IMG/VR virus record: IMGVR_UViG_3300023175_000005
Coordinates: 124,001-188,000 of that record
Length of the DNA: 64,000 nt
Reading direction: 5' to 3' (one strand)
In this document: piece after piece, positions 11,116-29,303 of the stretch
Layout: each line of letters opens with the position of its first letter
How positions within the stretch are numbered: position 1 is the stretch's first letter
Translations under genes and position numbers: made by a program
Notes under the pieces: model-generated
Told to the model about the DNA's origin: nothing
Seen by the model: only the letters and a program-made list of their open reading frames with translations
Database searches by the model: none

Positions 11116-11130
11116 CAGTAGGAGTTACTA

Positions 11131-15048: not shown

Positions 15049-15976
15049 AATACTAGACTATGACATTATCTATCTTAGTTATGACGAACCTAATGCTGAA
15101 AAAAACTATGCAGATTTGTGTAGGAAAATTCCTTGGGCTAAACGTGTACACGGTGTAGACGGAAGTGATGCAGCACACAAGGCATGTGCAGAACTTTCAG
15201 AGACGGATAGATTTATTACTATCGATGGCGATAATATTATTGATTCTGAGTTTCTTACAAAAGAATATGATTTAGAAACACACGAAGACATGCACTGGAA
15301 TCGTGATATAAAGTTTGAAGACTGTGTAGTAAGTTGGAGTGCTAGAAATACAATTAACGGACTAATGTACGGTAACGGCGGTATTAAATGCTGGCCTAAA
15401 GATAAAGTGTTAAACATGCGTACACACGAAAATGCAGATCCTAATAATGCACATGCTCAAGTTGATTTTTGTTGGGACTTAGAATATATTCAAATGAATG
15501 CGTGTTATAGCGAAATTATGAATAATGCTACTCCGCAGCAAGCATGGCGTGCTGGATTTAGAGAAGGTGTCAAAATGGCACTTGACAGAGGTATGAAACC
15601 TACTTTGAATGATTTTAAACGTAATCATTGGAAGAACTTGCATCGTTTGTATATTTGGCTAATGATAGGCGCTGATGTAGAAAATGGTAAATGGGCTATT
15701 TACGGCGCAAGAGAAGGTCTTTATAAAACAATGTGTACGGATTGGGACTTTGTAAATGTTCGTGATTTTAAATGGTTAAATGAATATTGGGCAAATGAAG
15801 TTGAATCTAAAGTATCTTTAGAAGGACTTGAAGATTCAATTGAGGAATATGGTATTAAACTAATTAACGAACTCGATTTACCTATTGCTGAAGAATGCTT
15901 AACTGCACAACAAAGTAATTTTTTCAAAACAGTATATCAAAATCCGGGTAGAACTGCTGGACAACAATTTATATGA
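15035..15976 (+). CDS. GT-A-like glycosyltransferase
   Basis: DIIYLSYDEPNA..N, RVHGV.G...AH..., FITIDGDN (DxD), YG.GG.K and AW.A.FRE..K. Clear paralogue of the C-terminal domain of 31720-34284. Confidence 0.6.
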   Translation: MSKFKILDYDIIYLSYDEPNAEKNYADLCRKIPWAKRVHGVDGSDAAHKACAELSETDRFITIDGDNIIDSEFLTKEYDLETHEDMHWNRDIKFEDCVVSWSARNTINGLMYGNGGIKCWPKDKVLNMRTHENADPNNAHAQVDFCWDLEYIQMNACYSEIMNNATPQQAWRAGFREGVKMALDRGMKPTLNDFKRNHWKNLHRLYIWLMIGADVENGKWAIYGAREGLYKTMCTDWDFVNVRDFKWLNEYWANEVESKVSLEGLEDSIEEYGIKLINELDLPIAEECLTAQQSNFFKTVYQNPGRTAGQQFI

Positions 15977-17355
15977 AATCAGAAACAGATAGAATTAAAG
16001 AAGCCGCTAGTATAATGGAGGATGTAAGTCCGACATTCTGTTTGGCTAAGTGGCATCATACTACAATTTATTTACACACAGGTGATACACACAGTTGCTA
16101 TCATCCGTCGCCGCATAAGATTGATTTAGAAGAAATTAAAAACAATCCTAGTGCATTGCACAATACACTTACAAAGAAAAAAGAACGTGCAAAAATGCTT
16201 GTAGGTGAAAAACCTAAAGGCTGTACCTATTGCTGGAATGTCGAAGCACTAGGAGATGATCATATTTCTGATAGAAACATTCGTAATGAAAGTATTTACA
16301 AGCCTGAGCGATTACAAGAAATTGTAGATTCGCCTTGGGATTTTGACGTAAATCCAGAATATATCGAAATTGCATTTAGTAATGAATGCAATTTTAAATG
16401 TGGATATTGTTCACCTATGGCAAGTAGTAGCTTTTATAACGAAGTCAAAAAACATGGTCCGTATGATATGGTTAAAAATCATCGATGCGATGTTGATTGG
16501 TTTCAGCCTATGGAAGAAGGATCAAATCCTTACGTAGATGCATGGTGGAAATGGTGGCCTGAAGTAAGTAAGACACTAAACATTTTACGCATTACAGGCG
16601 GTGAGCCTCTTATGCATAAAAGCACATGGCGTATATTTGACGAACTTAAAGAAAATCCACGTCCTCATATTGAACTTAACCTCAATAGTAACATGGGTTT
16701 AAGTCCACGCATTGTGTCTAAGTTTGCCGATAATGTAAAAGAACTTTTAGAAGGTAACAAAATTAAAAAGTTTAAAGTATATTCTAGTATAGATACATTT
16801 GATAATCGTGCAGAATATCTTCGCACAGGTTTAGATGTAAATCTTTGGGAAAGTAATATGAAAAACTTTTTAAATATTACTGGCTCCGATTTAACAATCA
16901 TGTGTACGTTTAATATTCTTAGTGTTACAAGTTTTAATTTATTCCTACAAAAAGTTTTAGATTGGCGTAAAGAATTTTATGATCCTAAGCGTAGACGTAT
17001 TAGATTTGATACACCTTATCTAAAAGAACCGTTACAATATGATATGCATATTTTACCTAAGGATGAATTTTTGCCTTACATGGATAAAATTTTACAATTT
17101 ATTAATGACAATAGAGACGACAAAGACACTACGAAATTTAGTGATTTAGAATATGAACGTTTTCGTAGAGTAAGAAATTATTTTGCAAATGTTAACTATG
17201 ACGAACCGAGAGTAAAAGAAGGCAGAGCAGATTTTTACAATTGGTTTAATGAATATGATGTTAGAAGAAACGTTAATTTTTTAGAAACATTTCCTGAGAT
17301 GGAAGGGTTTTATAATTTATGTAAGCAAACTAAGGATGAACTAGAAGTTGTCTAA
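15973..17355 (+). CDS. Radical SAM protein with N-terminal twitch-like Fe-S domain
   Basis: CNFKCGYC and TGGEPL. N-terminal C.AKW...G.THSCYH...C.YCW. Confidence 0.85.
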   Translation: MKSETDRIKEAASIMEDVSPTFCLAKWHHTTIYLHTGDTHSCYHPSPHKIDLEEIKNNPSALHNTLTKKKERAKMLVGEKPKGCTYCWNVEALGDDHISDRNIRNESIYKPERLQEIVDSPWDFDVNPEYIEIAFSNECNFKCGYCSPMASSSFYNEVKKHGPYDMVKNHRCDVDWFQPMEEGSNPYVDAWWKWWPEVSKTLNILRITGGEPLMHKSTWRIFDELKENPRPHIELNLNSNMGLSPRIVSKFADNVKELLEGNKIKKFKVYSSIDTFDNRAEYLRTGLDVNLWESNMKNFLNITGSDLTIMCTFNILSVTSFNLFLQKVLDWRKEFYDPKRRRIRFDTPYLKEPLQYDMHILPKDEFLPYMDKILQFINDNRDDKDTTKFSDLEYERFRRVRNYFANVNYDEPRVKEGRADFYNWFNEYDVRRNVNFLETFPEMEGFYNLCKQTKDELEVV

Positions 17356-18190
17356 TTTGTTTTGTTACGGGTGCAGTTTTACAAATTACAGTTGGCCTAT
17401 GTATCCTGAATACTTGGCACAGGAGTTTGATAAAACATTTAATTGTGGATTATCTGGTTTAGGTAATTTTGCAATATATCATAGATTACTAGGCACTGTT
17501 TTAGAAAACAAAATTAAAGAAAATGATACTGTAATTGTTCAGTGGTCAGAGCCATCAAGGCATGATTACCTTGACAAAGAAGAAGAATGGTCTAATATTG
17601 GCGGCGGCTTAGCCTTAGAACTAACTGCAAAAAGATTAGATCATATTATATCTCATAGTTCGTCTTACGTTAAAACTTTGACATATATGTTTCATACAGT
17701 TAACTTACTTGAATCTTTAAAAGTTAACTGGACTTTTCTTTTTCTTACACCAGATGCAATGGCACACCTAAGTATTCAAAGAGGTAAACATATAGATTTA
17801 GCAGGACATCAAAAACGCATAGCACAAAATATGACGAACAAAGTTAACAAGTATCGTCATAAGTTTATCGAGTTACCATTAATGCATCACTTTAATCATA
17901 AAGATCCTGTGTTTATGACAAATCATGGTGGCAATTGGTGGGATGACCATCCTAGACCTAAATCAACATATAAATTTGTAAAGGAAGTTTTAGCACCAAA
18001 ATTACAAATTAATACTAATAATATAACTAGTTACAACAAATATGTTTGTAACAGAATATTTGTACCTGTAAAAGAAAGAACATACAATCAAGAATTTATG
18101 ATTGAAGCAATGCGTGAGTTACCTGACAATCTCAAGTATAGTTATGATATAAGTGAATTAATAAATGAAACAATTGATATGGGCATATAA
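17348..18190 (+). CDS. SGNH/GDSL-like hydrolase or acyltransferase
   Basis: GCSFT (block I), G.GN (block II), QWS..R.D and DDHP (block V). TTG start. Confidence 0.55.
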   Translation: MSNLFCYGCSFTNYSWPMYPEYLAQEFDKTFNCGLSGLGNFAIYHRLLGTVLENKIKENDTVIVQWSEPSRHDYLDKEEEWSNIGGGLALELTAKRLDHIISHSSSYVKTLTYMFHTVNLLESLKVNWTFLFLTPDAMAHLSIQRGKHIDLAGHQKRIAQNMTNKVNKYRHKFIELPLMHHFNHKDPVFMTNHGGNWWDDHPRPKSTYKFVKEVLAPKLQINTNNITSYNKYVCNRIFVPVKERTYNQEFMIEAMRELPDNLKYSYDISELINETIDMGI

Positions 18191-19472
18191 TTGGATTGGG
18201 CCACTAGGTCCTTTAAATAACCATAAGATACCAGATGTATATGATCTGGCTAAGCGCATTGACGACATTGATGTTAAGTTTAGCGATGCAACAATGGAGC
18301 ATGATCCTGCTGTTATGGAGATAGGAAATTTTGTACCTTGCAAAATTATTCCATCTTCCGAGATAAAAGATATAGGGGATAGCAAATTTTTCTATGAAGT
18401 TATTTTAAGTCCTAACTTAAATTACATGTCTATCACAATGGATATGTTTTGCGGATTTTTACAAAGAACGCCTATTCCTGGCGAGGTTTGGGATAAAATT
18501 TACAATGGTAACGGATATCTATTTGTAAACTGTAGATATGAAAGTTTTGTTACGCATAGAGATTTTCAAACATTACATGATTATTTTAATAGTCAAGGTG
18601 TGCCCTTGAACAAAGTTATCTATGCAACAAACTGTGCAAATATACAAACTATTTACGACAAGTACTGTTTACAAGCAGGTGTAGGCGAAGATAAATTAAA
18701 TGTCGAATATATGGGTTTGTATATACAAATTACAAAAGACATTTTACGTGATGAAGTTTATGAAAGTCGTGTTGACTTGGGCAAACAAGATAGATTGTTT
18801 TTAAATTTTAACAGACGTAGTCATGAACATCGTATGTTGCTGTTATTGCAAATGATTAAAAATGATATGCTAGATGACTGTCATATGAGTTTTGACAGAC
18901 ATGGAGGTGTTAATAGACCATTTGAACATTTTATATACGATTTTGAGAGAACTTCTTCAAAATATAATTTAGAATTTGAAAGAGAAGATTTTGAAAATTT
19001 ATGGGACGATTTGCCTTTTGTGCTAGACAGTAAACATTTTGACAGATTTCCTGTAGAAGAACACTTAATGGATACTGCTGAATGGTATGATCGAACATAT
19101 ATTCATCTTGCAAGCGAAACAAATTTTGAAAATAATGTAATTCATTTGACAGAAAAAACAATGAAGCCAATTATATTCAAACAACCATTTATTATTGTTG
19201 GCCCTGCGTTTACACTTCAGTATCTTAAAAAATTAGGATTTAAAACTTTTGATGCTTGGTGGGACGAAAGTTATGATGAAACACTAAATGGGAAAGATAG
19301 AATGCAAGCAATTATAAAAGTATGTAAAGATATCAAGTCTTGGCCTAAACAAAAATTAAAACAGTTATATACACAAACACATGAGATACGAGAATACAAT
19401 ATTCAACATTTTAAAAATTTAAAACCTGTAGAACTATTAGATCTTGTTGAAAAATATGGAGCAGACATATGA
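18165..19472 (+). CDS. Putative glycosyltransferase, GT10 (fucosyltransferase)-like C-terminal motif
   Basis: FL.FNRR..HR...Y......ET......LTEKT.KP....PF...G......LK.LGF.TF....DESYD resembles GT10 motif II (Y.F....EN.....Y.TEK). Confidence 0.5.
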   Translation: MKQLIWAYNWIGPLGPLNNHKIPDVYDLAKRIDDIDVKFSDATMEHDPAVMEIGNFVPCKIIPSSEIKDIGDSKFFYEVILSPNLNYMSITMDMFCGFLQRTPIPGEVWDKIYNGNGYLFVNCRYESFVTHRDFQTLHDYFNSQGVPLNKVIYATNCANIQTIYDKYCLQAGVGEDKLNVEYMGLYIQITKDILRDEVYESRVDLGKQDRLFLNFNRRSHEHRMLLLLQMIKNDMLDDCHMSFDRHGGVNRPFEHFIYDFERTSSKYNLEFEREDFENLWDDLPFVLDSKHFDRFPVEEHLMDTAEWYDRTYIHLASETNFENNVIHLTEKTMKPIIFKQPFIIVGPAFTLQYLKKLGFKTFDAWWDESYDETLNGKDRMQAIIKVCKDIKSWPKQKLKQLYTQTHEIREYNIQHFKNLKPVELLDLVEKYGADI

Positions 19473-20437
19473 GTAAGGTATTAGTATGCGGAGCCGGAGG
19501 ATTCATTGGAGTTCATTTGGTAAGAAGTTTAAAAGCACAAGGACATTATGTAATTGGTGCAGATTTAGAGTATCCTGAATTTAGCGAAACCGAATGTGAT
19601 GAATTTCATATTGTAGATTTGCGAGAACAAGCAGATGTACGTAAATTAATTACAGAAGACATTTATGAAATATATCAACTTGCTGCGGATATGGGAGGAG
19701 CAGGATATATTTTTACAGGCGATAATGATGCTGATATTATGCACAACTCTGCTATGATTAATCTTAACATTTTGAAAGAAATGGTTGTTAAAGGTGTAAA
19801 ACGTATTTTTTATAGTTCAAGTGCTTGCATGTATCCTGAACACAATCAGATGGATCCTGATAATCCTTTGTGTAGCGAAGAAAGTGCGTATCCAGCAAAT
19901 CCTGATTCTGAATATGGTTGGGAAAAATTATTCAGCGAACGCTTGTGTATGTCTTTTGAAAAGAATTATGGTATACGTGCAAGAATGTGTCGTTTTCATA
20001 ATGTGTTTGGACCAGAAAGCACATGGACTGGAGGTAAAGAAAAATCTCCCGCAGCCTTATGTAGAAAAGTTGCAATGAGCGAAGACGAAACTGTAGAAAT
20101 TTGGGGACCTGGCACACAAACAAGAAGTTTTCTTTATATCGATGAAGCTATTGAAGGCATTCATAGGATTATGGAAAGCGATTATAATCAGCCGTTAAAT
20201 CTTGGCAGTGAACGTATGATTGCTATAAATGATTTAGCACACCTAATTGCGAGTGTTAACACTAACAAAAAACTGAGAATTAATAATGTGCCAGGACCTG
20301 TTGGTGTTAATGGCAGAAACAGTCATAATAAACTTATTAAGGAAACCATTGGTTGGGCACCGCAAGACAATTTAGAATATGGCTTGCAACAAACTTATCA
20401 ATGGATACTACAACAAATTGAGAAACAAGAAAATTGA
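19469..20437 (+). CDS. gme: GDP-mannose 3,5-epimerase-like NAD-dependent epimerase
   Basis: GAGGFIG, AADMGGAGYI, YSSSACMYP, YGWEK, RFHN.FGP..TW.GGKEK.PAALCRK and QTRSF.YID are the diagnostic GME motifs, including the catalytic Cys and Lys. Confidence 0.85.
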   Translation: MSKVLVCGAGGFIGVHLVRSLKAQGHYVIGADLEYPEFSETECDEFHIVDLREQADVRKLITEDIYEIYQLAADMGGAGYIFTGDNDADIMHNSAMINLNILKEMVVKGVKRIFYSSSACMYPEHNQMDPDNPLCSEESAYPANPDSEYGWEKLFSERLCMSFEKNYGIRARMCRFHNVFGPESTWTGGKEKSPAALCRKVAMSEDETVEIWGPGTQTRSFLYIDEAIEGIHRIMESDYNQPLNLGSERMIAINDLAHLIASVNTNKKLRINNVPGPVGVNGRNSHNKLIKETIGWAPQDNLEYGLQQTYQWILQQIEKQEN

Positions 20438-21663
20438 AACTTGCTGCATACTATCATGATAAAATAGGAAATATGCACGGTGTACAGCCGTACATTTTTG
20501 ATACGTGGTTATATTCTCGAACACTGAAAAAAGCAGGTTTTGGTATAAAACAAATTAAAGATGGGTGGAACTGGCCTGGAATATATTTTGTAAGTGTTGC
20601 AGGTCATTCTAATGATTGGGGAACACATGACAATCATGTGTTAAACAATTTGCCCAGCGAAGTTGCTAATGCAGTTCGTAGAGGAAAAATTAAAATTGTA
20701 ATTGATAATTCGTCTGAAGGTATGAATATGATATTTCCTGGATGTGATGGGTTTTATAATATGCACGAAATAATGGAAGAAAATGATTTTCATAAAAATA
20801 GTGTTATACTTATGGACGGCAATGCAGATTTCTCTACAAATTATTTAACATGGTGTAACAGAAATTGGGATATACCGTTGTTTGCACATGTTCATAGTTT
20901 TACGCATACCTTTTATTTCGATAATAGAATACCACAAAGCGCACTAGTTATAAATGCTATTAAAAATAAAGATTCCAAAGATTTCCTTAGCATGAATAGA
21001 AATACAAGACCATCAAGGCTGGAGCATTTATTTTGGTTGTTAGATACAGGTTATGTAAGCAAGGGACTTGTAAGTGGAAGTTTACCGCAAAAAGAACAAG
21101 TAGGTGCGCCTAGTAGAATTACACTACAGGATGACAATTTATGGAATAAAACCTTGCTCAAAGGTTTGCCTTTAGACATAGATGGCGTAGATTGTAAAAG
21201 TGACCCTGACAAAGATGCCACTATTTTTAATCATGCCCTTTATGAAAATAGTTTGCTCAGTGTGGTTACAGAAACTGCATTTGCAGAAGAAGGGATGTTT
21301 ATTACAGAAAAAGTAATGAAACCCATTGCAGCAGGACATCCTTTTATGATATTAGGACAATTTAGAGTCTTAAAATATCTAAGAAGTTTAGGTTATAAAA
21401 CTGACTTTGAAGGCATAGATCAAAGTTACGATGAGATTTTAAATCCTAACGAAAGATTCCAAGCATTTCATAAAAGTTTAGAAAATTGGATTAAATTGAC
21501 AAGAGCACAAAAAGAAGATATAATTATGGAAAATCTAAATAAGATTACATATAATCAAAATTTATTTAGATCTACAAATTATAATAGAGATACTGGATTG
21601 CGACTCATGACAACTGTTCAAAATCTTTTTAACAATAAATATACTATCAATGAAAAAAATTAG
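20434..21663 (+). CDS. Putative glycosyltransferase, GT10-like TEK family
   Basis: FLSMNR..R..R, Y..S..SVVTET......FITEK..KPI..GHPF...G and DQSYD. Paralogue of 18165. Confidence 0.5.
   Translation: MKLAAYYHDKIGNMHGVQPYIFDTWLYSRTLKKAGFGIKQIKDGWNWPGIYFVSVAGHSNDWGTHDNHVLNNLPSEVANAVRRGKIKIVIDNSSEGMNMIFPGCDGFYNMHEIMEENDFHKNSVILMDGNADFSTNYLTWCNRNWDIPLFAHVHSFTHTFYFDNRIPQSALVINAIKNKDSKDFLSMNRNTRPSRLEHLFWLLDTGYVSKGLVSGSLPQKEQVGAPSRITLQDDNLWNKTLLKGLPLDIDGVDCKSDPDKDATIFNHALYENSLLSVVTETAFAEEGMFITEKVMKPIAAGHPFMILGQFRVLKYLRSLGYKTDFEGIDQSYDEILNPNERFQAFHKSLENWIKLTRAQKEDIIMENLNKITYNQNLFRSTNYNRDTGLRLMTTVQNLFNNKYTINEKN
21636..21641 (+). promoter_or_regulatory. Possible late promoter TAAATA close to the start of the B12-radical SAM gene
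   Basis: TAAATATACTA (identical to 10195-10205) ends just before ATG 21650, with no obvious SD sequence. Confidence 0.35.
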
Positions 21664-23614
21664 TTTTGTAAATCCGAATTTCCAGCAAGGACCTAAAGAG
21701 TTTAACGCTTATTACTTACCGTATAGTGTTGGCATACTTTGGTCTTATGTAAACCAGTTTGAATCTATTAATACCCAATATGAACTTGATGAGTTTGTAT
21801 GGCGAAGAGATCCTATTGCTGAAACAGTTGAACTTTTAAAAGATAACACAGTAGTAGGCTTTTCTACATACATATGGAACAAGCAATACAATAATGTTTT
21901 AGCCAGAGAATTAAAAAAAGCAAATCCAAATATTGTAATTTTATTTGGCGGACCTGAGCCGCCTATCGAAGACCCAAACTTTTTTGAACGTTTTCCTTAT
22001 ATTGATGTTTGTGTAAAACAGGAAGGAGAAAGAAGTTTTAGAAAAATTCTTGAAGCATTAGACGATAGAGATTCTTGGTTAGATGTAAAAGGTTTAATTG
22101 TAAATGTAGATGGTGAAACTGTAGACACAGGTGCTCAACCAAGAATTAACGAATTAGATGAGATACCTAGTCCTTATCTAACTGGTGTGTTTGATAAACT
22201 TATGGTAAAGCATCCTGAAGTGACATGGAATGCTACACTGGAAACAAATCGAGGTTGTCCGTATGCTTGTACTTTTTGTGACTGGGGCAGTTTAACATAT
22301 AATAAAGTTAAAAAGTTTAATTTAGAACGTGTGTTTGATGAATTAGAATGGATCGGTAAAACAGGTTGCGACTTTGTAAGTTTAACGGATGCAAACTTTG
22401 GTATTTTTGCAGAACGTGATAGTATGATTGCAGATAAACTTATTCAAGTGCAAAAAACATACGATAACCCAAAAGCATATACTATTGCTTGGGCTAAAAA
22501 TCAAAAGAAAGAAGTTGTAGATATTGTTAGAAAACTTATCTATGATGGCGGTGCAAAAATTGGATTGAATTTATCTGTACAGTCAATGGATGAAAATGTT
22601 TTAGAAATTATCAAACGTAAAAATCTTGAAATGAATAAAATTGAACAAGTGTTTGATATGTGCGAAGAAAATAATATTCCGTTATATACAGAGTTAATTT
22701 TAGGGTTACCCGGAGAAACATTAGAAACATGGAAAGATAATTTTTATAGTCTATACAAAGCTGGTAACCATACAGGCGTTACAGTATATCAAGCACAGTT
22801 GCTTGAAAATGCAGAAATGAATCTTGTGCAAAAACAAGAATTCAAAATTGAAGGTAGAAAAGTTACTGACTATCTTGTTGGCGCTTATAACGAAGATGAA
22901 CTTAAAGAAGGTATAGATATTGTTGTATCTACAAAAGACTTATCTTATGAAAAGATGCTAGATGCACAAGTGTTTAGTTGGTTTCAAAATACTTTCCATA
23001 TCAACGGTATCACAAATTATATCAGTCGATTTTTATACAACTTTAGCAACATAGAATATAGTGAATTTTACGAAAAATTATTTGACCATATAAGCCGAGA
23101 TCCTTGGTTAAAAAGCGAAATTGATCGCATAAGAAAATACTATATTAACTGGGGTACTAACGGTAGAATTGATCACCCTAAAATTCAAGGTATTGAAATA
23201 CACGGATGGAATCTTATCCACAGCACTATTATTAATTTACACAGTGAAGATAAAGCATCACATGTGTTTAGTGTTGTAAAAGATTTTATGCAAAAAGAAT
23301 ACGCACATTTTCCACAAGATGTAATGGACCAACTTATGGACTTCCAATCTAGTTACCTTATCGATTACAACAAAATTAAATCTTACCCGCTCACAAAAGA
23401 TTACGATTACGATTTTCTCGGATACATACATAGTGGGGAAGAATTGAATAATAAGAGTACTTTATTTTTTGATTTTCCTGAAAACCAAGATATGAGTTTA
23501 CAACAATTTTGTGAACAGATATTTTTTGCAAGAAGAAGGAATTTTGGTAAAGCATGGGTGACCAAGAAAAAGTTGCACACATTTACGCATGGCAATATGG
23601 AAATGCAGAACTAG
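21650..23614 (+). CDS. Cobalamin-dependent radical SAM protein (class B methyltransferase-like)
   Basis: N-terminal B12-binding pattern (PYSVG.L..Y, GFSTYIWN, GGP, EGE), ETNRGCPYACTFC, DANFG and ILGLPGET. Confidence 0.85.
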   Translation: MKKISFVNPNFQQGPKEFNAYYLPYSVGILWSYVNQFESINTQYELDEFVWRRDPIAETVELLKDNTVVGFSTYIWNKQYNNVLARELKKANPNIVILFGGPEPPIEDPNFFERFPYIDVCVKQEGERSFRKILEALDDRDSWLDVKGLIVNVDGETVDTGAQPRINELDEIPSPYLTGVFDKLMVKHPEVTWNATLETNRGCPYACTFCDWGSLTYNKVKKFNLERVFDELEWIGKTGCDFVSLTDANFGIFAERDSMIADKLIQVQKTYDNPKAYTIAWAKNQKKEVVDIVRKLIYDGGAKIGLNLSVQSMDENVLEIIKRKNLEMNKIEQVFDMCEENNIPLYTELILGLPGETLETWKDNFYSLYKAGNHTGVTVYQAQLLENAEMNLVQKQEFKIEGRKVTDYLVGAYNEDELKEGIDIVVSTKDLSYEKMLDAQVFSWFQNTFHINGITNYISRFLYNFSNIEYSEFYEKLFDHISRDPWLKSEIDRIRKYYINWGTNGRIDHPKIQGIEIHGWNLIHSTIINLHSEDKASHVFSVVKDFMQKEYAHFPQDVMDQLMDFQSSYLIDYNKIKSYPLTKDYDYDFLGYIHSGEELNNKSTLFFDFPENQDMSLQQFCEQIFFARRRNFGKAWVTKKKLHTFTHGNMEMQN

Positions 23615-25719
23615 AAAATAAAATCTGTTCACGTGTATGGGATCATATTTATTTTTGGTGGTATCATGAATTTGAAATTGATCTTTCCCAAAAATCTGTA
23701 AAACACATAAACAAAAACAATATAAAATATACTGTTGTAACTTGCATTAACGATTTACCTTTACTTCAAAAAAGACTACGAGTAATAGGCTTACGGCCAC
23801 ATGGCAGAGCAGATATTTGGCCTGAGTTCTTCATTGTAAGAGCACATCAAGAACTGTTGAATAACAACTTCTTGTATGATGATTTAATATTACAAGACAA
23901 ACATACTTGGGATATATGGAAGCATCCTTTCTTATCGATGAATGGTAGAGAGCGTCATCATAGAGATGTTTTCATTGATGTTCTTGCTAGAGAAAATTTA
24001 ATAGATAAAGGATTAATAACATACCATCAGACTCATCGGAATGATGATCCTACTCAGTATTTTAAGTATCATGATGGTAGTAGATTGACTACAAATGATA
24101 GGTTTACTGAAAAATTATGTAGTTTTGATTTTAATGATGACTTTATCTATAGTTTCCTACATATTCCTACCGAAAGTTATACAGAAGGTATGACAATAAC
24201 AGAAAAGACAGCCACACCTATGTTATGTAAACTTCCGTTCTTAACTGTCGGTAGTAGATATTTCCATTCTAAATTAATGGAAATGGGTTTCGAAATATAT
24301 GATGAAGTTTTTGACTATAGTTTTGACAATTTAAAAACTGACGAAGAACGTATCGAAGGTATAGTTAAAAATATAAAATATGTTGTAGATAACAAACATA
24401 ATTTGCAAGGTATGTATGACACACTAAAGCCTAAATTACAAAAAAATGTAGAACACATATTTGACAAATACATATCAAAGTTTGAACACGTGCCTTCCAC
24501 TGTGCAAAATAGGATTTTGGAAATTACTGCACCAGGAGGTGTAATGGAAGGCGATGAAGGAGAACTTTTAACTTTAGCAAAAAGGTTTACTGATAGAAAA
24601 ATCAAAGCCAAAGGTCTAAAAGAAAGAAGAGATTATCTTTGGTATAATTATTGGTGTTCACATGAAAATGGAGATGGTTTTAATTTTAGACAAATTTTAA
24701 AAGATCTTAAAACTGTAAAAACTGATAAAGTTGTAATAGATGGTAGCGCAGAATGGGAACCATGGTTTGATCCAGAATATGTAGAATATGTGAATGCTAA
24801 TCCTAATATAGAAACTATTGTGATTAGTGGTTGTGCAAAAAATTCTTATTATGAAAATAAATTAAAAACAAGCGGCATAAACAGAATTAGAAGTTTACAC
24901 TGGTCGACTTTCTTTTTCCATTATTCTACAAAAACAATTCTTGATGCATACGAGGATTATAACACACCAAAAGATGTTAGAGAATATTGGAATATAGATG
25001 ACACAACAACAAAATGGCCTTGGATTTGTTTGCAAAACAGAGCACATTTACATCGTTGTCATTTAATTGATAATATTAAAAAATATAATTTACAAGATGC
25101 AGGTTATGTAACATGGATCGATGGCGGCAAAGAAAGACCAGACTTTCCATACAAATACCATGATGGTAAACAAATGACGCTAGAAAATGATACTTTTAGT
25201 CTTGATATGGATTCATACAAATTACCTGAAGAATATTGGCATACACTATGTGATTTTGTATCTGAAGCATGTTGGGAAACTATATTTGTTACTGAAAAAA
25301 CAATATATCCTTTGTTAAGTAAAAAATTATTTTTGGTATGCGGAGCACAAGGATTTCACGAACATTTAGATAAACTTGGGTTTGTTAGATATGATGAAAT
25401 ATTCGACTACAGTTTTGATAAAGAAACAGACTTAGCAAAACGTGTAGCAATGTATACTGAAGAAATGAGAAAGTACAGTGAAAATACTTTTTCTACTATT
25501 AAGACACACATACAAGAATACAATGAGTTGTATCATAAAATTGAATATAACCACAAGCGTGTGTTTGAAATCTTAAAAAGAGATCCTTACATGCCTAAAG
25601 CAGTAAAATATCAATGGTCAAGAATTGATACTGAAATACAAGATCAAGCATTGCCGCCGTGGCAAAAGTTATATTTAGAACTTAAAAAACAAGTGATACG
25701 TGCGAGAAAAGAATTATGA
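23554..25719 (+). CDS. Two-domain putative glycosyltransferase (tandem GT10-like TEK domains)
   Basis: Two copies of N.R...HR...TEKT..P.L....F...G....H..L...GF..YDE.FDYSFD. Confidence 0.5.
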   Translation: MGDQEKVAHIYAWQYGNAELENKICSRVWDHIYFWWYHEFEIDLSQKSVKHINKNNIKYTVVTCINDLPLLQKRLRVIGLRPHGRADIWPEFFIVRAHQELLNNNFLYDDLILQDKHTWDIWKHPFLSMNGRERHHRDVFIDVLARENLIDKGLITYHQTHRNDDPTQYFKYHDGSRLTTNDRFTEKLCSFDFNDDFIYSFLHIPTESYTEGMTITEKTATPMLCKLPFLTVGSRYFHSKLMEMGFEIYDEVFDYSFDNLKTDEERIEGIVKNIKYVVDNKHNLQGMYDTLKPKLQKNVEHIFDKYISKFEHVPSTVQNRILEITAPGGVMEGDEGELLTLAKRFTDRKIKAKGLKERRDYLWYNYWCSHENGDGFNFRQILKDLKTVKTDKVVIDGSAEWEPWFDPEYVEYVNANPNIETIVISGCAKNSYYENKLKTSGINRIRSLHWSTFFFHYSTKTILDAYEDYNTPKDVREYWNIDDTTTKWPWICLQNRAHLHRCHLIDNIKKYNLQDAGYVTWIDGGKERPDFPYKYHDGKQMTLENDTFSLDMDSYKLPEEYWHTLCDFVSEACWETIFVTEKTIYPLLSKKLFLVCGAQGFHEHLDKLGFVRYDEIFDYSFDKETDLAKRVAMYTEEMRKYSENTFSTIKTHIQEYNELYHKIEYNHKRVFEILKRDPYMPKAVKYQWSRIDTEIQDQALPPWQKLYLELKKQVIRARKEL

Positions 25720-26891
25720 AAAAAGTAGCAATGATAGGATGCGGCAAATTAGGACAAGATTGTGCCGAAGTAATGGCAACACATTATGATGTTGTAGGTT
25801 ATGATGTTGCAAAGCGGACACCGCGAAACTTTTCTATGTGTCAAACTATAAAAGACGCAGTTACAGATACAAATATAATTTTTGTTGCAGTGCCCACACC
25901 ACACGAAGCACAATATGGAGGCGAGACTCCTACTAGTCATTTGCCTAATAAAGATTTTGACTATAGTATTGTTGAATCTGTGTTACGTAAAATTAACAAG
26001 CATGTAAACAAATCACAGTTAGTTGTGCTTATTAGTACAGTTCTTCCTGGTACAACTAGAAATAGATTTATCAAACTAATAAAAAATGCACGTTTTGTTT
26101 ACAATCCTTACTTAATAGCAATGGGTACAATTAAATGGGACATGGTAAATCCTGAAATGGTTATTATTGGCACTGAAGACGGTAGCACTACAGATGATGC
26201 AAAAGAGTTGATCGACTTTTATAAGCCTATAATGCAAAACAATCCTAGATATGAAATAGGCACATGGGATGAAGCAGAAGCTATAAAAATATTTTACAAT
26301 ACGTTTATCAGTACTAAACTAAGTTTAGTTAATATGATACAAGATGTTGCTGAAACAAGTGGTAATATTAATGTTGATGTTGTTACAGAAGCCCTTGCAA
26401 AAAGCACATACCGAATTATGGGGCCAGGCTATATGCAAGCAGGTATGGGAGACGGAGGCGCATGTCATCCTAGAGATAATATTGCTTTACGATATCTAGC
26501 ACAACGGTTAGACTTAGGTTATGATTTGTTTGATAGTATTATGACTGCAAGAGAAGTACAAGCCAAAAGAATGGCACAGAGATTGATTAGAGAAGGTAAT
26601 GATATTTGTATTGTAGGAAAAGCCTATAAGCCAGGAGTTTATTACACTATAGGCAGTAGTAGTATGCTAGTAGGACATTATGTAGAAGAATTAGGAGGGT
26701 CTCTAACTTATTATGACATCAACACAGGAGATACGGTATTTCCTAAAGCAGATGTATATCTAATAGGTTATTGGGAACAGTATGTAGAAGAAATTGAATG
26801 GCCGCTTGGGTCTACAGTAGTAGATCCTTGGAGGAAACTTAGAGATTCAAACGAATTCAAAGTTGTACATTACGGTAACACACGGAGTTAA
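25716..26891 (+). CDS. UDP-glucose/GDP-mannose 6-dehydrogenase family protein
   Basis: GCGKLG, FVAVPTP, STVLPGT, YNP, EAEAIK..YN and catalytic GGACHPRD; G.AYKP. Confidence 0.85.
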   Translation: MKKVAMIGCGKLGQDCAEVMATHYDVVGYDVAKRTPRNFSMCQTIKDAVTDTNIIFVAVPTPHEAQYGGETPTSHLPNKDFDYSIVESVLRKINKHVNKSQLVVLISTVLPGTTRNRFIKLIKNARFVYNPYLIAMGTIKWDMVNPEMVIIGTEDGSTTDDAKELIDFYKPIMQNNPRYEIGTWDEAEAIKIFYNTFISTKLSLVNMIQDVAETSGNINVDVVTEALAKSTYRIMGPGYMQAGMGDGGACHPRDNIALRYLAQRLDLGYDLFDSIMTAREVQAKRMAQRLIREGNDICIVGKAYKPGVYYTIGSSSMLVGHYVEELGGSLTYYDINTGDTVFPKADVYLIGYWEQYVEEIEWPLGSTVVDPWRKLRDSNEFKVVHYGNTRS

Positions 26892-26898
26892 ATATTGC

Positions 26899-27639
26899 AT
26901 GGAACTAGTAACACATCTTAAAACAACATATCCAAACATTAAAAAATTAAATTATGAATTTGTAGGAACACCGCCATATCCTATGATTACATTAGACAAT
27001 TTTTTGCCAGAATCAATGGCAAAAGCAATGGAACTTGAGTGCGAAAGCATACCAGAATTCCATTGGAAAGAATTTACCCGTCGCGATAGTTATATGCGTG
27101 AACTTACAAATTTAGAGGTAGCACCTGTAGCACAAAATTTTACAAATCAAATGCACAGTCAAGCAGGTATGCAATGGTTGATTAAACTTACTGGTATTAA
27201 GGATCTTATTCCTGATCCTTATATTGTAGGTGCAGGTTATAGTAGAAGTTATCCAGGATGTAAATTATCAATCCATACAGATTTTAACTGGAATGATACA
27301 ATTAAAGTACATCGTATGCTGAGTATGATAATTTATCTAGGATCGGATTGGGAAGAAGAATGGGGCGGCCATTTACATTTCAATGACTTCAACAATAAAG
27401 GTCCTGTACAAAAAGTTGCACCAATGTTTAATAGAGCAATTATTTGGAGACACCATGAAAGAGGGTTCCATGGGTTTCCTGATGCACTAGCATGTCCTGA
27501 AGGGCGTACAAGAAATGCATTTAGATTGTTCTTTTACGTAAGCAATGCAAAACACGATGATGAGAATTTACCTCATCGTAGTTTGTATTGGTTTGATGAA
27601 GAAACAGGCGAACCCTATGATATTACAACTGAAAGATAG
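26899..27639 (+). CDS. Fe(II)/2-oxoglutarate oxygenase (prolyl-hydroxylase-like)
   Basis: HTD...IIYL..DW.EEWGG.L...P.FNR......HG......R. ATG 26899 preferred over the upstream alternative start. Confidence 0.8.
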   Translation: MELVTHLKTTYPNIKKLNYEFVGTPPYPMITLDNFLPESMAKAMELECESIPEFHWKEFTRRDSYMRELTNLEVAPVAQNFTNQMHSQAGMQWLIKLTGIKDLIPDPYIVGAGYSRSYPGCKLSIHTDFNWNDTIKVHRMLSMIIYLGSDWEEEWGGHLHFNDFNNKGPVQKVAPMFNRAIIWRHHERGFHGFPDALACPEGRTRNAFRLFFYVSNAKHDDENLPHRSLYWFDEETGEPYDITTER

Positions 27640-28267
27640 AACTGTAGAGTTAAACGATCCTTGGGATGCAGTCACAGTATTTGAAGATAGACTAGCAGAA
27701 TATGCTGGATCTAAATATGCAGTATGTGTTGATAGTTGTAGTAATTCAATGTTTCTTTGTATGAAATACTTAGGCGTAACAGGTCAAACAATTACATTGC
27801 CTGCACATACATATTCAAGCACACCAATGCAGTGTATTCACGCAGGTAATAAAATTAAATTTATTGATAAAGAATGGAGTGGTGATTATTTTTTAGATCC
27901 TACTCCTATTGTTGACGGAGCAACTAGATTCCGTAAAGGAATGTATATACCTGAGTCATATTATTGTGTAAGTTTTCATCATAGAAAAACACTTAAATTA
28001 GGTAAAGGTGGAGTAATACTAACAGATGACATAGACTTTGTAGAATGGTGCCGTCCTATGATTTATGATGGGCGCCACAAATATGTTAGACATGAAGATG
28101 ACGATTATAGTTGTATAGGCTATCATATGTATATGACTCCAGAAGAAGCCATAAGAGGTATTACACTCTTTGAAGAATTAGGACCAGATAATCCTGATAC
28201 AGGTTCTAGTACAACATACAAAGATTTACGAAAACAGAAAGTATTTGACGAGTATAGAGATGAGTAA
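27617..28267 (+). CDS. Short DegT/DnrJ/EryC1/StrS-family PLP aminotransferase
   Basis: FE..LAEY.GSKYAV.V.SC, P..TY, VDGA and SFHHRKTLKLGKGG.I.TDD with the PLP Lys. Only ~216 aa. Confidence 0.75.
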   Translation: MILQLKDRTVELNDPWDAVTVFEDRLAEYAGSKYAVCVDSCSNSMFLCMKYLGVTGQTITLPAHTYSSTPMQCIHAGNKIKFIDKEWSGDYFLDPTPIVDGATRFRKGMYIPESYYCVSFHHRKTLKLGKGGVILTDDIDFVEWCRPMIYDGRHKYVRHEDDDYSCIGYHMYMTPEEAIRGITLFEELGPDNPDTGSSTTYKDLRKQKVFDEYRDE

Positions 28268-29303
28268 AATAAACGCAAACACAGAATGGGGCACACTTAA
28301 AGAAGTAATTTTAGGTAATGCAGAGTGGGCTCAAGTTCCTAGGATCAAAAACAAAGATATACATTGTGTTGACTATGCTAACATAGATGATTTATCCGAC
28401 ATGCCGGGCGGGCAATATCCAGAAGATGTTATTAACGAAACTATAGAAGACTTAAACGTGTTTCAAAAACAACTTGAAGACATTGGTGTAAAAGTCATGC
28501 GTCCTACAAAGTTTAATCATGGAGTTACACACATGTCTCCTGATTGGTCTACTGATGCATACTATAGTTATTGTCCACGTGATAGTGTGCTTACTATTGG
28601 TGATATGCTTATCGAAACTCCTATGCCTCTTAGAAGTAGATATTTTGAAACATTTGGTATGAGAAGTATTTTCAAAGAGTATTTTGTAAACGGCAGTAGA
28701 TGGATTGCAGCACCTAAGCCTAGATTACCAGATAAACTTTATGATAGATCAGATCTAAATGCTCCTACACTTACTGAATATGAACCAGCATTTGATGCTG
28801 CTAACTGTGTAAAGATAGGTAAAGATATATTATATCTTGTTTCAAACAGCGGAAACAAAATGGGCGCACGGTGGCTACAAAGTACACTTGGTGAAAAGTA
28901 TACAGTGCATATGTTAGAAAACGTGTATGCATATGTACATTTAGATACTAGTATTATGCCATTGGCACCTGGTAAAGTATTATTAAATTCTGAAAGAGTA
29001 AAAGAAGAACAACTACCTGACATATTCAACAAGTGGGAAAAAATATGGGCACCTGAACCACATGAAACACAGGTTATGCATGATTGGGCACCTGCAAGTC
29101 CTTGGCTAGGAATGAATATTTTAAGTTTAAGTGAATCTTTAGTTGCCGTTGAAGAAAATCAACATAGTTTAACAAAAACTTTAGAAAATTCAGGCTTTGA
29201 TGTTATGCACGTAAAGATGAGACATTGTCGAACACTAAGCGGCGGCCCCCATTGTGTTACACTTGATACAGTTAGAGAGGATGAATATGCAGACTATCGA
29301 TAA
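28260..29303 (+). CDS. Amidinotransferase (glycine/inosamine-phosphate amidinotransferase family)
   Basis: EWG.LKEVI.G, CPRD, R.FE, FDAAN (Asp), HLDT (His) and GGPHCVTLD (Cys): full catalytic triad. Confidence 0.9.
   Translation: MSKINANTEWGTLKEVILGNAEWAQVPRIKNKDIHCVDYANIDDLSDMPGGQYPEDVINETIEDLNVFQKQLEDIGVKVMRPTKFNHGVTHMSPDWSTDAYYSYCPRDSVLTIGDMLIETPMPLRSRYFETFGMRSIFKEYFVNGSRWIAAPKPRLPDKLYDRSDLNAPTLTEYEPAFDAANCVKIGKDILYLVSNSGNKMGARWLQSTLGEKYTVHMLENVYAYVHLDTSIMPLAPGKVLLNSERVKEEQLPDIFNKWEKIWAPEPHETQVMHDWAPASPWLGMNILSLSESLVAVEENQHSLTKTLENSGFDVMHVKMRHCRTLSGGPHCVTLDTVREDEYADYR

What the first reader, a model, noticed from the sequence alone, without database searches (positions are those of the whole stretch)
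18165..26891. GDP-mannose 3,5-epimerase flanked by GT10-like genes: a candidate L-galactose/L-uronate transfer module
Seen: GME sits between two TEK-motif proteins, followed by a B12 radical SAM, a double TEK-domain protein and an NDP-sugar 6-dehydrogenase. Known: GME makes GDP-L-galactose and GDP-L-gulose; GT10 enzymes use GDP-L-fucose (6-deoxy-L-galactose) and carry an E..TEK donor-binding motif. Inference: the four TEK domains are an unassigned GT family transferring rare L-hexoses, or their uronates after the dehydrogenase acts.
Basis: partly seen in the sequence, partly recalled or inferred. Interest (0 to 1): 0.7.

Follow-up and report, generated by a model that had tools for sequence, protein, structure and literature searches.

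The report
New phage glycosyltransferase family beside GME
An uncultured salt-marsh jumbo phage carries an operon in which a GDP-mannose 3,5-epimerase is flanked by, and in related phages fused to, members of a very large, unannotated, virus-only family of glycosyltransferase-fold proteins whose active-site motifs resemble fucosyltransferases, so they probably attach rare L-sugars to an acceptor that is still unknown.

Summary
Window 18165-26891 is one overlapping + strand operon: TEK1, GME, TEK2, a B12 radical-SAM enzyme, a double TEK3, and an NDP-sugar dehydrogenase.

- **GME:** it matches Arabidopsis GME at 2e-102, and all five catalytic residues are kept.
- **No annotation:** the four TEK domains match no Pfam, PHROG or NCBIfam model.
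- **Fold:** AlphaFold models show a GT-B fold (TEK1 pLDDT 93). The best solved matches are T4 beta-glucosyltransferase and GT10 fucosyltransferases.
- **Relation to GT10:** PF00852 does not match. Deep profile-profile alignment is weak (P=0.02) but in register. It pairs E126, R223, E318 and T-E-K with GT10's tGE, R, EN and TEK positions. The distance equals that between GT10 and GT4, so this is a separate GT-B family with GT10 nearest.
- **Size and range:** 13,815 clusters at 50% identity and at least 597 IMG/VR loci. None was found in 50,697 GenBank phage records.
- **Link to GME:** GME sits next to the TEK1 subtype in 28 of 43 loci, against 1 of 36 for other subtypes. Three diverged lineages fuse the two genes.

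TEK1 as an L-galactosyl or L-gulosyl transferase is therefore well motivated. Donors for TEK2 and TEK3, the uronate idea and the acceptor remain untested. The module lies in an island with at least 16 radical-SAM genes, just after tail-fibre genes.

The parts
15973..17355 (+). N-terminal-twitch radical SAM enzyme. It is the most constant upstream partner of TEK1-type genes.
   Evidence: It matches NF033640 N_Twi_rSAM at 2.9e-94, above the cut-off, and carries CxxxCxxC at aa 139-146. An orthologue of 55-62% identity lies directly upstream of TEK1 in 31 of 43 IMG/VR loci.
17348..18190 (+). 280-aa protein of unknown function between the radical SAM gene and TEK1.
   Evidence: It has no Pfam, PHROG or NCBIfam match. 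A 285-aa gene occupies the same position in L009, and there are partial matches in other loci.
18165..19472 (+). TEK1, a GT-B-fold putative inverting glycosyltransferase of a new family. Candidate active-site residues are E126, R223, E318 and T329-E330-K331 (TEK codons at 19149-19157). It is the proposed user of the GME product.
   Evidence: The AF2 model has pLDDT 93 and a GT-B fold. R223, E318, E330 and K331 are invariant, and E126 is kept in at least 90% of sequences. These residues align in register with the GT10 invariant positions. The gene is fused to GME in P0015, P0127 and P0137. GME is adjacent in 28 of 43 loci.
19469..20437 (+). GDP-mannose 3,5-epimerase homologue, with S118, C120, Y149, K153 and K192 matching At S143, C145, Y174, K178 and K217.
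   Evidence: It matches 2c59 at 2e-102, with the alignment shown. It is 50-56% identical to cyanophage genes, one of them annotated as GME (PMC9602691).
20434..21663 (+). TEK2, a full-length paralogue of the TEK1 type with a divergent N-domain. The TEK codons are at 21304-21312.
   Evidence: BLASTP against TEK1 gives 8e-17 over the C-domain. It aligns over about 350 aa with other family members. Its nearest named language-model clusters are PF00852.
21650..23614 (+). Cobalamin-dependent radical SAM enzyme of the TokK/CysS/KedN5 type, probably an iterative C-methyltransferase.
   Evidence: It carries PF02310 and PF04055. It scores 8.7e-76 against NF033712 but below that model's cut-off. It matches TokK at 4.5e-81 and CysS at 4.3e-49. 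CxxxCxxC lies at aa 203-210. Orthologues of 63-71% identity occur in 11 TEK1 loci.
23554..25719 (+). TEK3, two tandem compact GT-B-like units (about aa 1-345 and 361-700). The TEK codons are at 24199-24207 and 25291-25299. In some relatives the two units are separate genes.
   Evidence: The AF2 model has pLDDT 76 and shows two Rossmann-pair units. VIA gives T4 BGT Z 12.7 and HpFucT Z 10.4 over 298-646. L032 and L040 carry the units as two genes, while L041, L053 and L080 carry them fused.
25716..26891 (+). Divergent NDP-sugar 6-dehydrogenase with a GGAC catalytic-Cys motif at aa 247-250. Its substrate is unknown.
   Evidence: It carries PF03721 and PF00984 only. It scores 157.9 bits against TIGR03026, below the 189.8 cut-off. 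It matches UDP-Glc DH at 5e-22 and GDP-Man DH at 3e-16, and phrog_9148 at 4.7e-98.
26863..27639 (+). 2OG-Fe(II) oxygenase of the prolyl-4-hydroxylase type. It recurs in one branch of TEK1-GME loci.
   Evidence: It matches PF13640 at 8.7e-13. Homologues of 29-39% identity lie downstream of GME in L014-L028.

Best explanation
The stretch is the core of a phage-encoded cytoplasmic glycan-building operon. The phage is an uncultured T4-like jumbo phage of the Rak2/PA5oct/CBB relationship from a salt marsh.

**Proposed steps**
1. GME converts host GDP-D-mannose into GDP-beta-L-galactose and/or GDP-L-gulose. This is inferred from 55% identity to the plant enzyme and five conserved catalytic residues.
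2. TEK1 is a soluble two-domain GT-B enzyme of a new, virus-restricted family. It binds that GDP-L-sugar in its C-domain through R223, E318 and E330-K331. These sit at the positions of the GT10 donor-site Arg, the E of 'EN', and Glu249-Lys250.
3. With E126 of the N-domain as general base, TEK1 transfers the sugar with inversion to give an alpha-L-glycoside, as GT10 enzymes do with GDP-L-fucose.
4. TEK2 and the two units of TEK3 share the donor-site scaffold but have unrelated N-domains. They would add further sugars from other donors to other positions of the growing glycan. One donor may be the product of the adjacent 6-dehydrogenase.
5. The B12 radical-SAM (TokK/CysS type), the N-twitch radical-SAM and the 2OG oxygenase tailor the sugars or the acceptor.

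**Acceptor**
The most likely acceptor is the phage's own virion proteins or a glycan on them. Fibre genes lie directly upstream, and there is no lipid-carrier machinery.

**Shown here**
- Gene order.
- GT-B fold.
- Conserved residues.
- Family size and viral restriction.
- Adjacency and fusion with GME.

**Inferred**
- Donor identity: about 0.6 for TEK1.
- Inverting mechanism.
- Roles of the other enzymes.
- Acceptor: about 0.35-0.4 for virion proteins.
For: **Fold**
- The TEK1 model has pLDDT 93 and pTM 0.90.
- Foldseek gives 31 PDB hits at E<=1e-3. The ones listed are GT-B glycosyltransferases or GT-B-fold partners of them.
- VIA gives T4 BGT Z 11.8, and GT10 entries AtFUT11 10.1, FUT9 9.9, HpFucT 9.9 and mango FUT13 9.3.
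- TEK3 is two GT-B-like units.

**Active-site register**
- In the 113-sequence GT10 alignment, tGE, EN and TEK are invariant.
- They align with TEK1 E126, E318 and T329-E330-K331. Posterior confidence is 7, 3 and 9.
- HpFucT Glu95 is the proposed base and Glu249 and Lys250 contact GDP-fucose (PMC4202792, PMC11468063).

**Profile distances**
- TEK to GT10: score 24.5, P=0.021.
- TEK to GT4: 13.6, P=0.61.
- GT10 to GT4: 23.8, P=0.037.
- Reversed controls: 12-16.

**Language-model neighbours**
- PF00852 clusters are the nearest named neighbours of TEK1, TEK2 and TEK3b.

**Link to GME**
- GME lies within 10 kb in 28 of 43 TEK1-type loci.
- In 26 of those 28 it lies downstream on the same strand, with gaps of 5-95 nt in 24.
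- The figure is 1 of 36 for other TEK subtypes.
- TEK1::GME fusions are P0015, P0127 and P0137, with the GME part 72, 59 and 55% identical to the window's GME.

**Glycan context**
- Other TEK proteins are fused to other SDR epimerases and to FkbM or class I methyltransferases.
- A related locus carries a mannose-phosphate isomerase/nucleotidyltransferase-like gene.

**GME**
- Match to 2c59 at 2e-102 with the catalytic residues kept.

**Presence in RNA libraries**
- Contigs from four salt-marsh metatranscriptome libraries tile 17300-23200 at 99% identity or more. DNA carry-over is not excluded.
Against: - No biochemical data exist for any family member.
- No HMM-level match to any GT family was found.
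- The TEK-GT10 profile signal is marginal (P=0.02, HHalign probability 2%).
- The top structural hit for both models is T4 DNA beta-glucosyltransferase, not GT10.
- GT10's donor Tyr246 position is His, Phe or Thr here.
- The R223 pairing in the extended alignment has low confidence (1 of 9).
- About a third of TEK1-type loci show no GME within 10 kb, so the donor may not be fixed across the subtype.
- The loci are not phylogenetically independent.
- No GDP-mannose synthesis gene was found in the 256-kb record.
- Nothing identifies the acceptor.
Confidence: 0.55

Rival explanations
1. The TEK proteins are DNA glycosyltransferases that hypermodify the phage genome, like T4 alpha- and beta-glucosyltransferases or the arabinosyl transferases of RB69. 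GME and the dehydrogenase would supply unusual donor sugars.
For: T4 beta-glucosyltransferase is the top VIA match for both models (Z 11.8, Z 12.7 at rmsd 4.3). T4 alpha-glucosyltransferase also appears (Z 9.8 and 9.2). Phages are known to glycosylate DNA with diverse glycans (PMC13326640 and references in PMC12619734).
Against: All known routes start from a thymidylate-synthase homologue that makes 5hmC, 5hmU or 5hoC (PMC13326640). PF00303 finds none in the 256-kb record, although about 28% of the genome is missing. The match to BGT may only reflect that both are minimal GT-B proteins. Sequence, motif and language-model evidence point to GT10 instead. Six TEK genes plus at least 16 radical-SAM genes is far more than any known DNA-glycosylation cluster.
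Confidence: 0.1
2. The module remodels the host's surface polysaccharide (LPS or capsule) during infection, for example to block superinfection. This is what has been proposed for the sugar genes of cyanophages.
For: GME homologues in cyanomyoviruses sit among GDP-fucose synthesis genes and fucosyltransferases that are interpreted as cell-wall modification genes (PMC9602691).
Against: The scanned ORFs of the 64-kb window showed no priming phosphoglycosyl transferase, flippase, polymerase or ligase. The TEK proteins have no evident signal peptide or membrane segment (my reading of the sequences). None of the GME-bearing cyanophages tested has a TEK gene, so the two contexts are not the same system.
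Confidence: 0.13
3. The island makes or modifies a peptide or small-molecule product. The many SPASM/twitch and B12 radical-SAM enzymes would act on peptides, as in RiPP pathways, and the TEK proteins would glycosylate that product rather than virion proteins.
For: The window holds at least 16 radical-SAM ORFs, many with an N-terminal SPASM/twitch domain, and three with B12 domains. TokK and CysS homologues act in secondary metabolism.
Against: No precursor-peptide gene, protease or exporter was recognised. The constant partners of TEK1 are nucleotide-sugar enzymes. The island follows the fibre genes directly.
Confidence: 0.12
4. The TEK proteins are not glycosyltransferases. They would be another kind of GT-B-fold group transferase (pyruvyl, glycerophosphate or similar) or non-catalytic sugar-nucleotide binders.
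For: No HMM links them to any GT family. The pyruvyltransferase Pvg1p appears at Z 8.3. GT-B-like folds occur in non-GT enzymes (general knowledge).
Against: The top structural matches in both searches are nearly all nucleotide-sugar glycosyltransferases. The invariant Glu, Arg, Glu and Glu-Lys set coincides with the GT10 catalytic and donor residues. The fusions are to NDP-sugar epimerases.
Confidence: 0.07

Closest known systems
CAZy family GT10 / Pfam PF00852 (alpha-1,3/4-fucosyltransferases such as H. pylori FucT 2NZW/5ZOI, human FUT9, plant FUT11/13)
   Same: Both have a GT-B fold. They share the same order of conserved elements: an N-domain Glu after a beta-strand, a strand followed by Arg at a helix start, E(N), x-T-E-K, then a hydrophobic strand and Gly. 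These are aligned in register by hhalign. GT10 entries score Z 9.3-10.4. PF00852 clusters are the nearest named neighbours in language-model space. GT10 uses a GDP-L-sugar donor, which fits the link with GME.
   Different: PF00852 and the TEK profile do not detect each other. The profile-profile P is only 0.02, the same as GT10 against GT4. GT10 Tyr246 is H, F or T here. TEK1 has an insertion of about 55 residues between the Arg and the E..TEK, plus a family-specific W-D-E-S-Y-D motif. The N-domains are unrelated. The family is viral, often tandemly duplicated, and often fused to SDRs or methyltransferases.
T4 beta-glucosyltransferase (GT63, 1C3J/1QKJ)
   Same: It is the best structural match to both models (Z 11.8 and 12.7). 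It is a phage-encoded, compact, soluble, metal-independent inverting GT-B enzyme.
   Different: There is 8% identity and no shared motif. BGT uses UDP-glucose on 5hmC DNA, and no hydroxymethylase homologue was found here.
GDP-mannose 3,5-epimerase of plants (2C59) and cyanomyovirus homologues (S-SCSM1 ORF123, P-TIM68)
   Same: The window protein matches plant GME at 2e-102 with the catalytic Ser, Cys, Tyr, Lys and Lys conserved. It is 50-56% identical to genes in 37 cyanophage records.
   Different: In the cyanophages GME sits with GDP-fucose synthesis genes and GT11 or NodZ-type transferases and has no TEK neighbour. Here it is flanked by, and elsewhere fused to, TEK proteins.
Virus-encoded protein glycosylation systems of chloroviruses and mimiviruses, and virion glycosylation in mycobacteriophages
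   Same: In these systems a virus carries its own nucleotide-sugar enzymes, multi-domain GTs and GT-methyltransferase fusions, and decorates its own capsid or fibres in the cytoplasm (PMC9614988; Freeman et al. 2023 as cited in PMC12619734).
   Different: The GT family, the sugars and the host domain differ. Nothing comparable to the radical-SAM expansion is described there. Whether this phage's virion is glycosylated is unknown.

Membership tests
GT10 (Pfam PF00852 Glyco_transf_10) | Significant match to the family HMM | tested here: not met
   PF00852 finds no match in the whole 256-kb genome at E<=10. None of 45 family members matches any Pfam model. Five bona fide GT10 proteins score -1 to -3 bits against the TEK C-domain profile.
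GT10 (Pfam PF00852 Glyco_transf_10) | Donor-site motif: E-N ... Y-x-T-E-K (HpFucT Tyr246, Glu249, Lys250) plus the N-domain catalytic Glu (Glu95) | tested here: inconclusive
   T-E-K, the upstream Glu and an N-domain Glu are conserved and align in register with the GT10 invariant columns. The Asn of 'EN' is Thr, Ser or Ala, and Tyr246 is His, Phe or Thr. Residue roles are taken from PMC4202792 and PMC11468063.
GT10 (Pfam PF00852 Glyco_transf_10) | Profile-profile homology clearly above that to other GT-B families | tested here: inconclusive
   hhalign gives TEK against GT10 a score of 24.5 (P 0.021, probability 2%). TEK against GT4 scores 13.6 (P 0.61), GT10 against GT4 scores 23.8 (P 0.037), and reversed controls score 12-16. 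GT10 is nearest, but at inter-family distance.
GT10 (Pfam PF00852 Glyco_transf_10) | Inverting transfer of L-fucose from GDP-beta-L-fucose | not testable with these tools
   This needs an enzyme assay.
GT-B glycosyltransferase superfamily | Two Rossmann-like beta/alpha/beta domains with an inter-domain cleft, and structural matches to solved GT-B enzymes | tested here: met
   TEK1 has pLDDT 93. Foldseek gives 31 PDB hits at E<=1e-3; those listed are GT-B glycosyltransferases or GT-B-fold partners of them. VIA gives 40 chains at Z>=8; almost all the listed ones are GT-B enzymes, the exceptions being GT-domain fusion constructs of membrane receptors. TEK3 forms two such units.
GDP-mannose 3,5-epimerase (EC 5.1.3.18) | Extended SDR closest to characterised GME, with the catalytic Cys145/Lys217 acid-base pair and the Ser143/Tyr174/Lys178 triad | tested here: met
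   It matches 2c59 at 2e-102, against 3e-22 for the next family. S118, C120, Y149, K153 and K192 align with the A. thaliana residues. The residue roles rest on my knowledge of the A. thaliana GME structure work.
GDP-mannose 3,5-epimerase (EC 5.1.3.18) | Conversion of GDP-D-mannose to GDP-L-galactose or GDP-L-gulose | not testable with these tools
   This needs an enzyme assay.
Cobalamin-dependent radical SAM methyltransferases (TokK/CysS/KedN5 type) | N-terminal B12-binding domain, a radical-SAM core with CxxxCxxC, and family-level similarity | tested here: met
   It carries PF02310 and PF04055, with C203-x3-C207-x2-C210. It matches TokK at 4.5e-81 and CysS at 4.3e-49. The NF033712 score of 255 is below that model's 700-bit cut-off, so it is a relative and not an equivalog.
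UDP-glucose/GDP-mannose 6-dehydrogenase family | NAD-binding N-domain, central domain with the catalytic Cys, and C-terminal nucleotide-sugar domain | tested here: inconclusive
   PF03721 and PF00984 are found and a GGAC Cys motif is present. PF03720 is not detected, and the TIGR03026 score of 157.9 is below the 189.8 cut-off. Substrate class cannot be assigned (UDP-Glc DH 5e-22 against GDP-Man DH 3e-16).

The most novel reading that the evidence does not exclude
The TEK proteins found a new CAZy-level glycosyltransferase family that is essentially confined to uncultured aquatic jumbo phages. Its TEK1 branch would be the first dedicated L-galactosyl or L-gulosyl transferases known outside eukaryotes. 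Together with the surrounding radical-SAM, 2OG-oxygenase and methyltransferase genes, they would form a host-independent phage system that builds an exotic, C- or O-alkylated, L-sugar-containing glycan on the virion. This would be a bacterial-virus counterpart of the chlorovirus and mimivirus glycosylation machineries.
Probability: 0.25. Interest if true: 0.8.

Novelty: new variant of a known kind. Interest (0 to 1): 0.62.

Why it matters
Glycosyltransferases that use GDP-L-galactose or GDP-L-gulose are almost unknown. I know of no dedicated family in bacteria or phages, and a literature search found none.

This is a concrete, testable candidate, backed by gene fusion. The family has about 14,000 clusters at 50% identity, is invisible to Pfam, PHROGs and NCBIfam, and is absent from cultured phages.

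If the family is active, several things follow:
- It adds a new GT-B family.
- It gives enzymes for making alpha-L-galactosides.
- It assigns a function to thousands of hypothetical viral genes.
- It points to elaborate virus-encoded glycan synthesis in environmental jumbo phages.

The TEK genes diverge much faster than their partner enzymes (median 30% against 59-70% identity). That is the pattern expected for surface-glycan diversification. The radical-SAM-rich island around them is itself unexplained.

Tried and rejected
**Searches that found nothing**
- Megablast of the region, and tblastn of TEK1, TEK2 and TEK3, against 50,697 GenBank phage records found no match.
- The A1 profile found nothing in Sinorhizobium phage Phosso, Vibrio phage 2.275.O, PA5oct, S-SCSM1 or P-TIM68. 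The same profile did match in G000 and G001.
- A search of the A1 profile against PDB sequences gave only a repeated short 'Y.W.GPNG..SN' match to the Aureispira grappling-hook protein GhpA. I judge this a chance motif.

**Profile comparisons**
- hhalign of A1 against a 5-sequence GT10 alignment gave no signal. It was repeated with 113 GT10 and 194 TEK sequences, with GT4 and reversed controls.

**Cellular genomes**
- The genome-contig scan with A1 failed for lack of a conserved stretch.
- With A2 it found only one MAG, 'Haliscomenobacter' EUL_031. Contigs C1 and C3, which carry most of the TEK matches, also encode gp23 capsid proteins, so they are mis-binned phage contigs. The other TEK-bearing contigs (C31, C58, C110) were not checked.
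- The patterns used were narrow, so absence from cellular genomes is not proven.

**Complex prediction**
- Complex prediction of GME with TEK1 returned 'no answer'. It is neither evidence for nor against binding.

**Neighbouring and unknown ORFs**
- The ORFs beside GME in S-SCSM1 and P-TIM68 carry no TEK motif.
- PHROG and Pfam scans of the unknown ORFs at 12442-15976, 17348-18190 and 29254-30177 gave nothing useful.

**Idea rejected**
- I first took the phage for a cyanophage because of its low GC and the cyanophage GME hits. The capsid protein instead places it with Rak2/PA5oct/CBB-like jumbo phages.

Full report
**What is there**

The window is part (124001-188000) of a 256,558-bp IMG/VR virus record that CheckV rates about 72% complete. 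It has 33% GC, and nearly all long ORFs lie on the + strand. The phage encodes a T4-type gp23 capsid protein (PF07068, 8e-103). The closest cultured relatives of that protein are jumbo myoviruses: Sinorhizobium phage Phosso (75%), Vibrio phage 2.275.O (72%), PA5oct (70%) and CBB (68.5%). The same DNA is held by 14 salt-marsh metagenome runs and, in part, by six metatranscriptome runs. Contigs from four RNA libraries tile 17300-23200 at 99% identity or more. DNA carry-over is not excluded.

Six ORFs with overlapping stops and starts occupy 18165-26891.
- **GME (322 aa):** it matches A. thaliana GME at 2e-102 over its full length. The next-best family scores 3e-22. S118, C120, Y149, K153 and K192 correspond to the plant S143, C145, Y174, K178 and K217.
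- **B12 radical SAM (654 aa):** it has a B12-binding domain and a CxxxCxxC radical-SAM core. It matches the iterative C-methyltransferases TokK (4.5e-81) and CysS (4e-49).
- **Dehydrogenase (391 aa):** it has the N-terminal and central domains of the UDP-glucose/GDP-mannose dehydrogenase family and a GGAC cysteine motif. It falls below the TIGR03026 cut-off, and no C-terminal nucleotide-sugar domain is recognised. Its substrate is open.
- **TEK motif:** the extended motif occurs four times, in TEK1, TEK2 and twice in TEK3. The domains are homologous (E 7e-16 to 3e-7 against TEK1). Two more TEK genes lie elsewhere in the genome.

**What the TEK proteins are**

No Pfam, PHROG or NCBIfam model matches them or any of 44 homologues.

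An AlphaFold2 model of TEK1, built on a 45-sequence alignment, is confident (pLDDT 93, pTM 0.90).
- **Foldseek:** 31 PDB chains at E<=1e-3. Those listed are GT-B glycosyltransferases or GT-B-fold partners of them, among them GT20, GT4, SenB and T4 BGT.
- **VIA-align (exhaustive):** T4 beta-glucosyltransferase ranks first (Z 11.8). A GT4 enzyme follows at Z 10.5. The GT10 fucosyltransferases AtFUT11, FUT9, HpFucT and FUT13 score Z 9.3-10.1 with the lowest rmsd values.

TEK3 folds less confidently (pLDDT 76) into two compact GT-B-like units. The same two families head its list, with T4 BGT at 12.7 and HpFucT at 10.4 on the second unit. The GT-B fold is therefore established as far as prediction can establish it.

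**Is it GT10?**

By the family's own HMM, no. PF00852 finds nothing in the genome even at E<=10. Genuine GT10 proteins score as noise against the TEK profile.

I then collected 113 PF00852 proteins and 26 GT4 proteins and ran profile-profile comparisons:

| Comparison | Score | P |
|---|---|---|
| TEK vs GT10 | 24.5 | 0.021 |
| TEK vs GT4 | 13.6 | 0.61 |
| GT10 vs GT4 | 23.8 | 0.037 |
| Reversed controls | 12-16 | 0.36-0.75 |

The TEK-GT10 alignment is in register over the TEK motif and the following strand. In the extended alignment, TEK1 residues pair with GT10 columns as follows:
- E126 with the invariant Glu of the GT10 N-domain 'tGE' (113 of 113 sequences).
- R223 with the conserved Arg, at low confidence.
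- E318 with the invariant Glu of 'EN'.
- T329-E330-K331 with the invariant T-E-K.

In HpFucT, Glu95 is the proposed base and Glu249 and Lys250 contact GDP-fucose (PMC4202792, PMC11468063).

Language-model feature searches independently return PF00852 clusters as the nearest named neighbours of TEK1, TEK2 and TEK3b, at scores around 0.80. These are leads only.

My reading is that this is a separate GT-B family. Its nearest known relative is GT10, at about the distance that separates recognised GT-B families, and it appears to keep the GT10 catalytic constellation. Differences are the missing Tyr246 equivalent, a helical insertion of about 55 residues, a family-specific WDESYD motif, and unrelated N-domains.

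**Size and range of the family**

A profile search of 1.84 billion representatives found 13,815 clusters at E<=1e-3 and 4,954 at E<=1e-30. Many are tandem doubles or fusions. IMG/VR holds at least 597 loci. ESM-Atlas structural neighbours are all viral clusters.

No member was found in cultured or annotated sources:
- None in 50,697 GenBank phage records.
- None in the nearest cultured jumbo phages, nor in GME-bearing cyanophages.
- In 185,579 species genomes, with narrow patterns, only one MAG matched. Its contigs C1 and C3, which carry most of the TEK matches, also carry gp23, so they are phage contigs. The other TEK-bearing contigs were not checked.

**Link to GME**

Among 43 IMG/VR loci with a full-length TEK1-type gene, 28 have a GME orthologue of 63-77% identity within 10 kb. 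The figure is 24 of 31 when at least 3 kb of flank is present. In 26 of the 28 it lies downstream on the same strand, and in 24 of those the gap is only 5-95 nt. Among 36 loci that hold only other TEK subtypes, one has GME.

Three diverged representatives (P0015, P0127, P0137) are single polypeptides with TEK1 at the N-terminus and GME at the C-terminus. The GME parts are 72, 59 and 55% identical to the window's GME.

The wider conserved order is: N-twitch radical SAM (one to four copies), TEK1, GME, TEK, a 307-aa unknown, the B12 radical SAM, one or more TEK genes, then the dehydrogenase.

The partner enzymes are far more conserved than TEK1. Median identities are GME 66%, N-twitch radical SAM 59%, B12 radical SAM 68% and dehydrogenase 70%, against 30% for TEK1.

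Other TEK proteins are fused to different SDR epimerases and to FkbM or class I methyltransferases. Such fusions are common in glycan-building enzymes (general knowledge).

**Mechanism proposed**

GME makes GDP-L-Gal or GDP-L-Gul from host GDP-mannose. No nucleotidyltransferase was found in the record. TEK1 transfers that sugar with inversion. The other TEK units extend the glycan from other donors. The radical-SAM, 2OG-oxygenase and methyltransferase genes tailor it.

The acceptor is not identified. I favour virion proteins for three reasons:
- The island begins right after tail-fibre-like genes.
- The scanned ORFs showed no lipid-carrier or export machinery.
- The TEK proteins look soluble, with no evident signal peptide or membrane segment (my reading of the sequences).

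DNA glycosylation is the main structural rival because of the BGT match. However, no thymidylate-synthase homologue is present, and all known pathways need one (PMC13326640). Host-envelope remodelling and a peptide or small-molecule product remain possible.

**Novelty**

GME in phages is already annotated, for example in S-SCSM1 (PMC9602691). The B12 radical SAM and the dehydrogenase are members of known families. What is new is the TEK family itself and its specific coupling to GME. I rate this a new variant of a known kind: a new GT-B family.

Noticed in passing
window 15973-61953 (ORFs starting at 15973, 21650, 30197, 35386, 38167, 39492, 40391, 41793, 42785, 45059, 48381, 49441, 50601, 51751, 55251, 60745): At least 16 radical-SAM ORFs lie in about 46 kb, all on the + strand. 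Three have B12-binding domains (21650, 51751, 55251). Many have a SPASM/twitch domain at the N-terminus, before the radical-SAM core. Related phages carry one to four tandem N-twitch paralogues upstream of TEK1. I know of no described phage island like this, and its chemistry is unexplained.
   Followed up: partly
window 246-12402: There is a run of large fibre-like structural genes directly upstream of the sugar and radical-SAM island. Three consecutive ORFs (4746, 6817, 8734) share an N-terminal module (phrog_14394/15511). One has a tail Collar domain and one a cement/fibre-like C-terminus. An E1_FCCH-like domain occurs in 11131-12402.
   Followed up: partly
window 26863-29303: Three genes lie downstream of the dehydrogenase: a prolyl-hydroxylase-type 2OG-Fe(II) oxygenase, a short (240 aa) DegT-like aminotransferase fragment, and an amidinotransferase/ADI-like protein. 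The short DegT-like gene and the ADI-like gene recur together in L029 and L033, so the short form may be genuine rather than a pseudogene.
   Followed up: partly
window 29254-30177: This is a 307-aa protein with no family match. In at least nine related loci its orthologue (41-45% identity) sits immediately upstream of the TokK-like B12 radical SAM. Here it is displaced by about 6 kb.
   Followed up: no
G001 (MAG 'Haliscomenobacter sp.' EUL_031), contigs C1 and C3; loci L093, L094: Two contigs of 148-183 kb in a bacterial MAG each carry a gp23 capsid gene and many TEK genes; the MAG as a whole has 19 TEK matches. They are jumbo-phage contigs binned into the MAG. This may hint at a Saprospiraceae host, or may be mere mis-binning.
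   Followed up: partly
window 18165-18260 (TEK1 N-terminus, 'Y.W.GP.GP..N'): The conserved N-terminal motif of TEK1-type proteins matches the repeated 'Y.W.GPNG..SN' motif of the Aureispira grappling-hook protein GhpA (9flp). The summed E is 3e-8, but each individual repeat is insignificant. It is probably chance.
   Followed up: no
L011 (IMGVR_UViG_3300022934_002389, 135 kb): A second IMG/VR record carries the whole 15973-30177 region at 100% protein identity. The same phage was therefore assembled independently from another sample.
   Followed up: no
window 53597-54184 and 61973-62716: A redoxin/AhpC-like thiol peroxidase gene and a weak QueC-like match sit among the radical-SAM genes.
   Followed up: no
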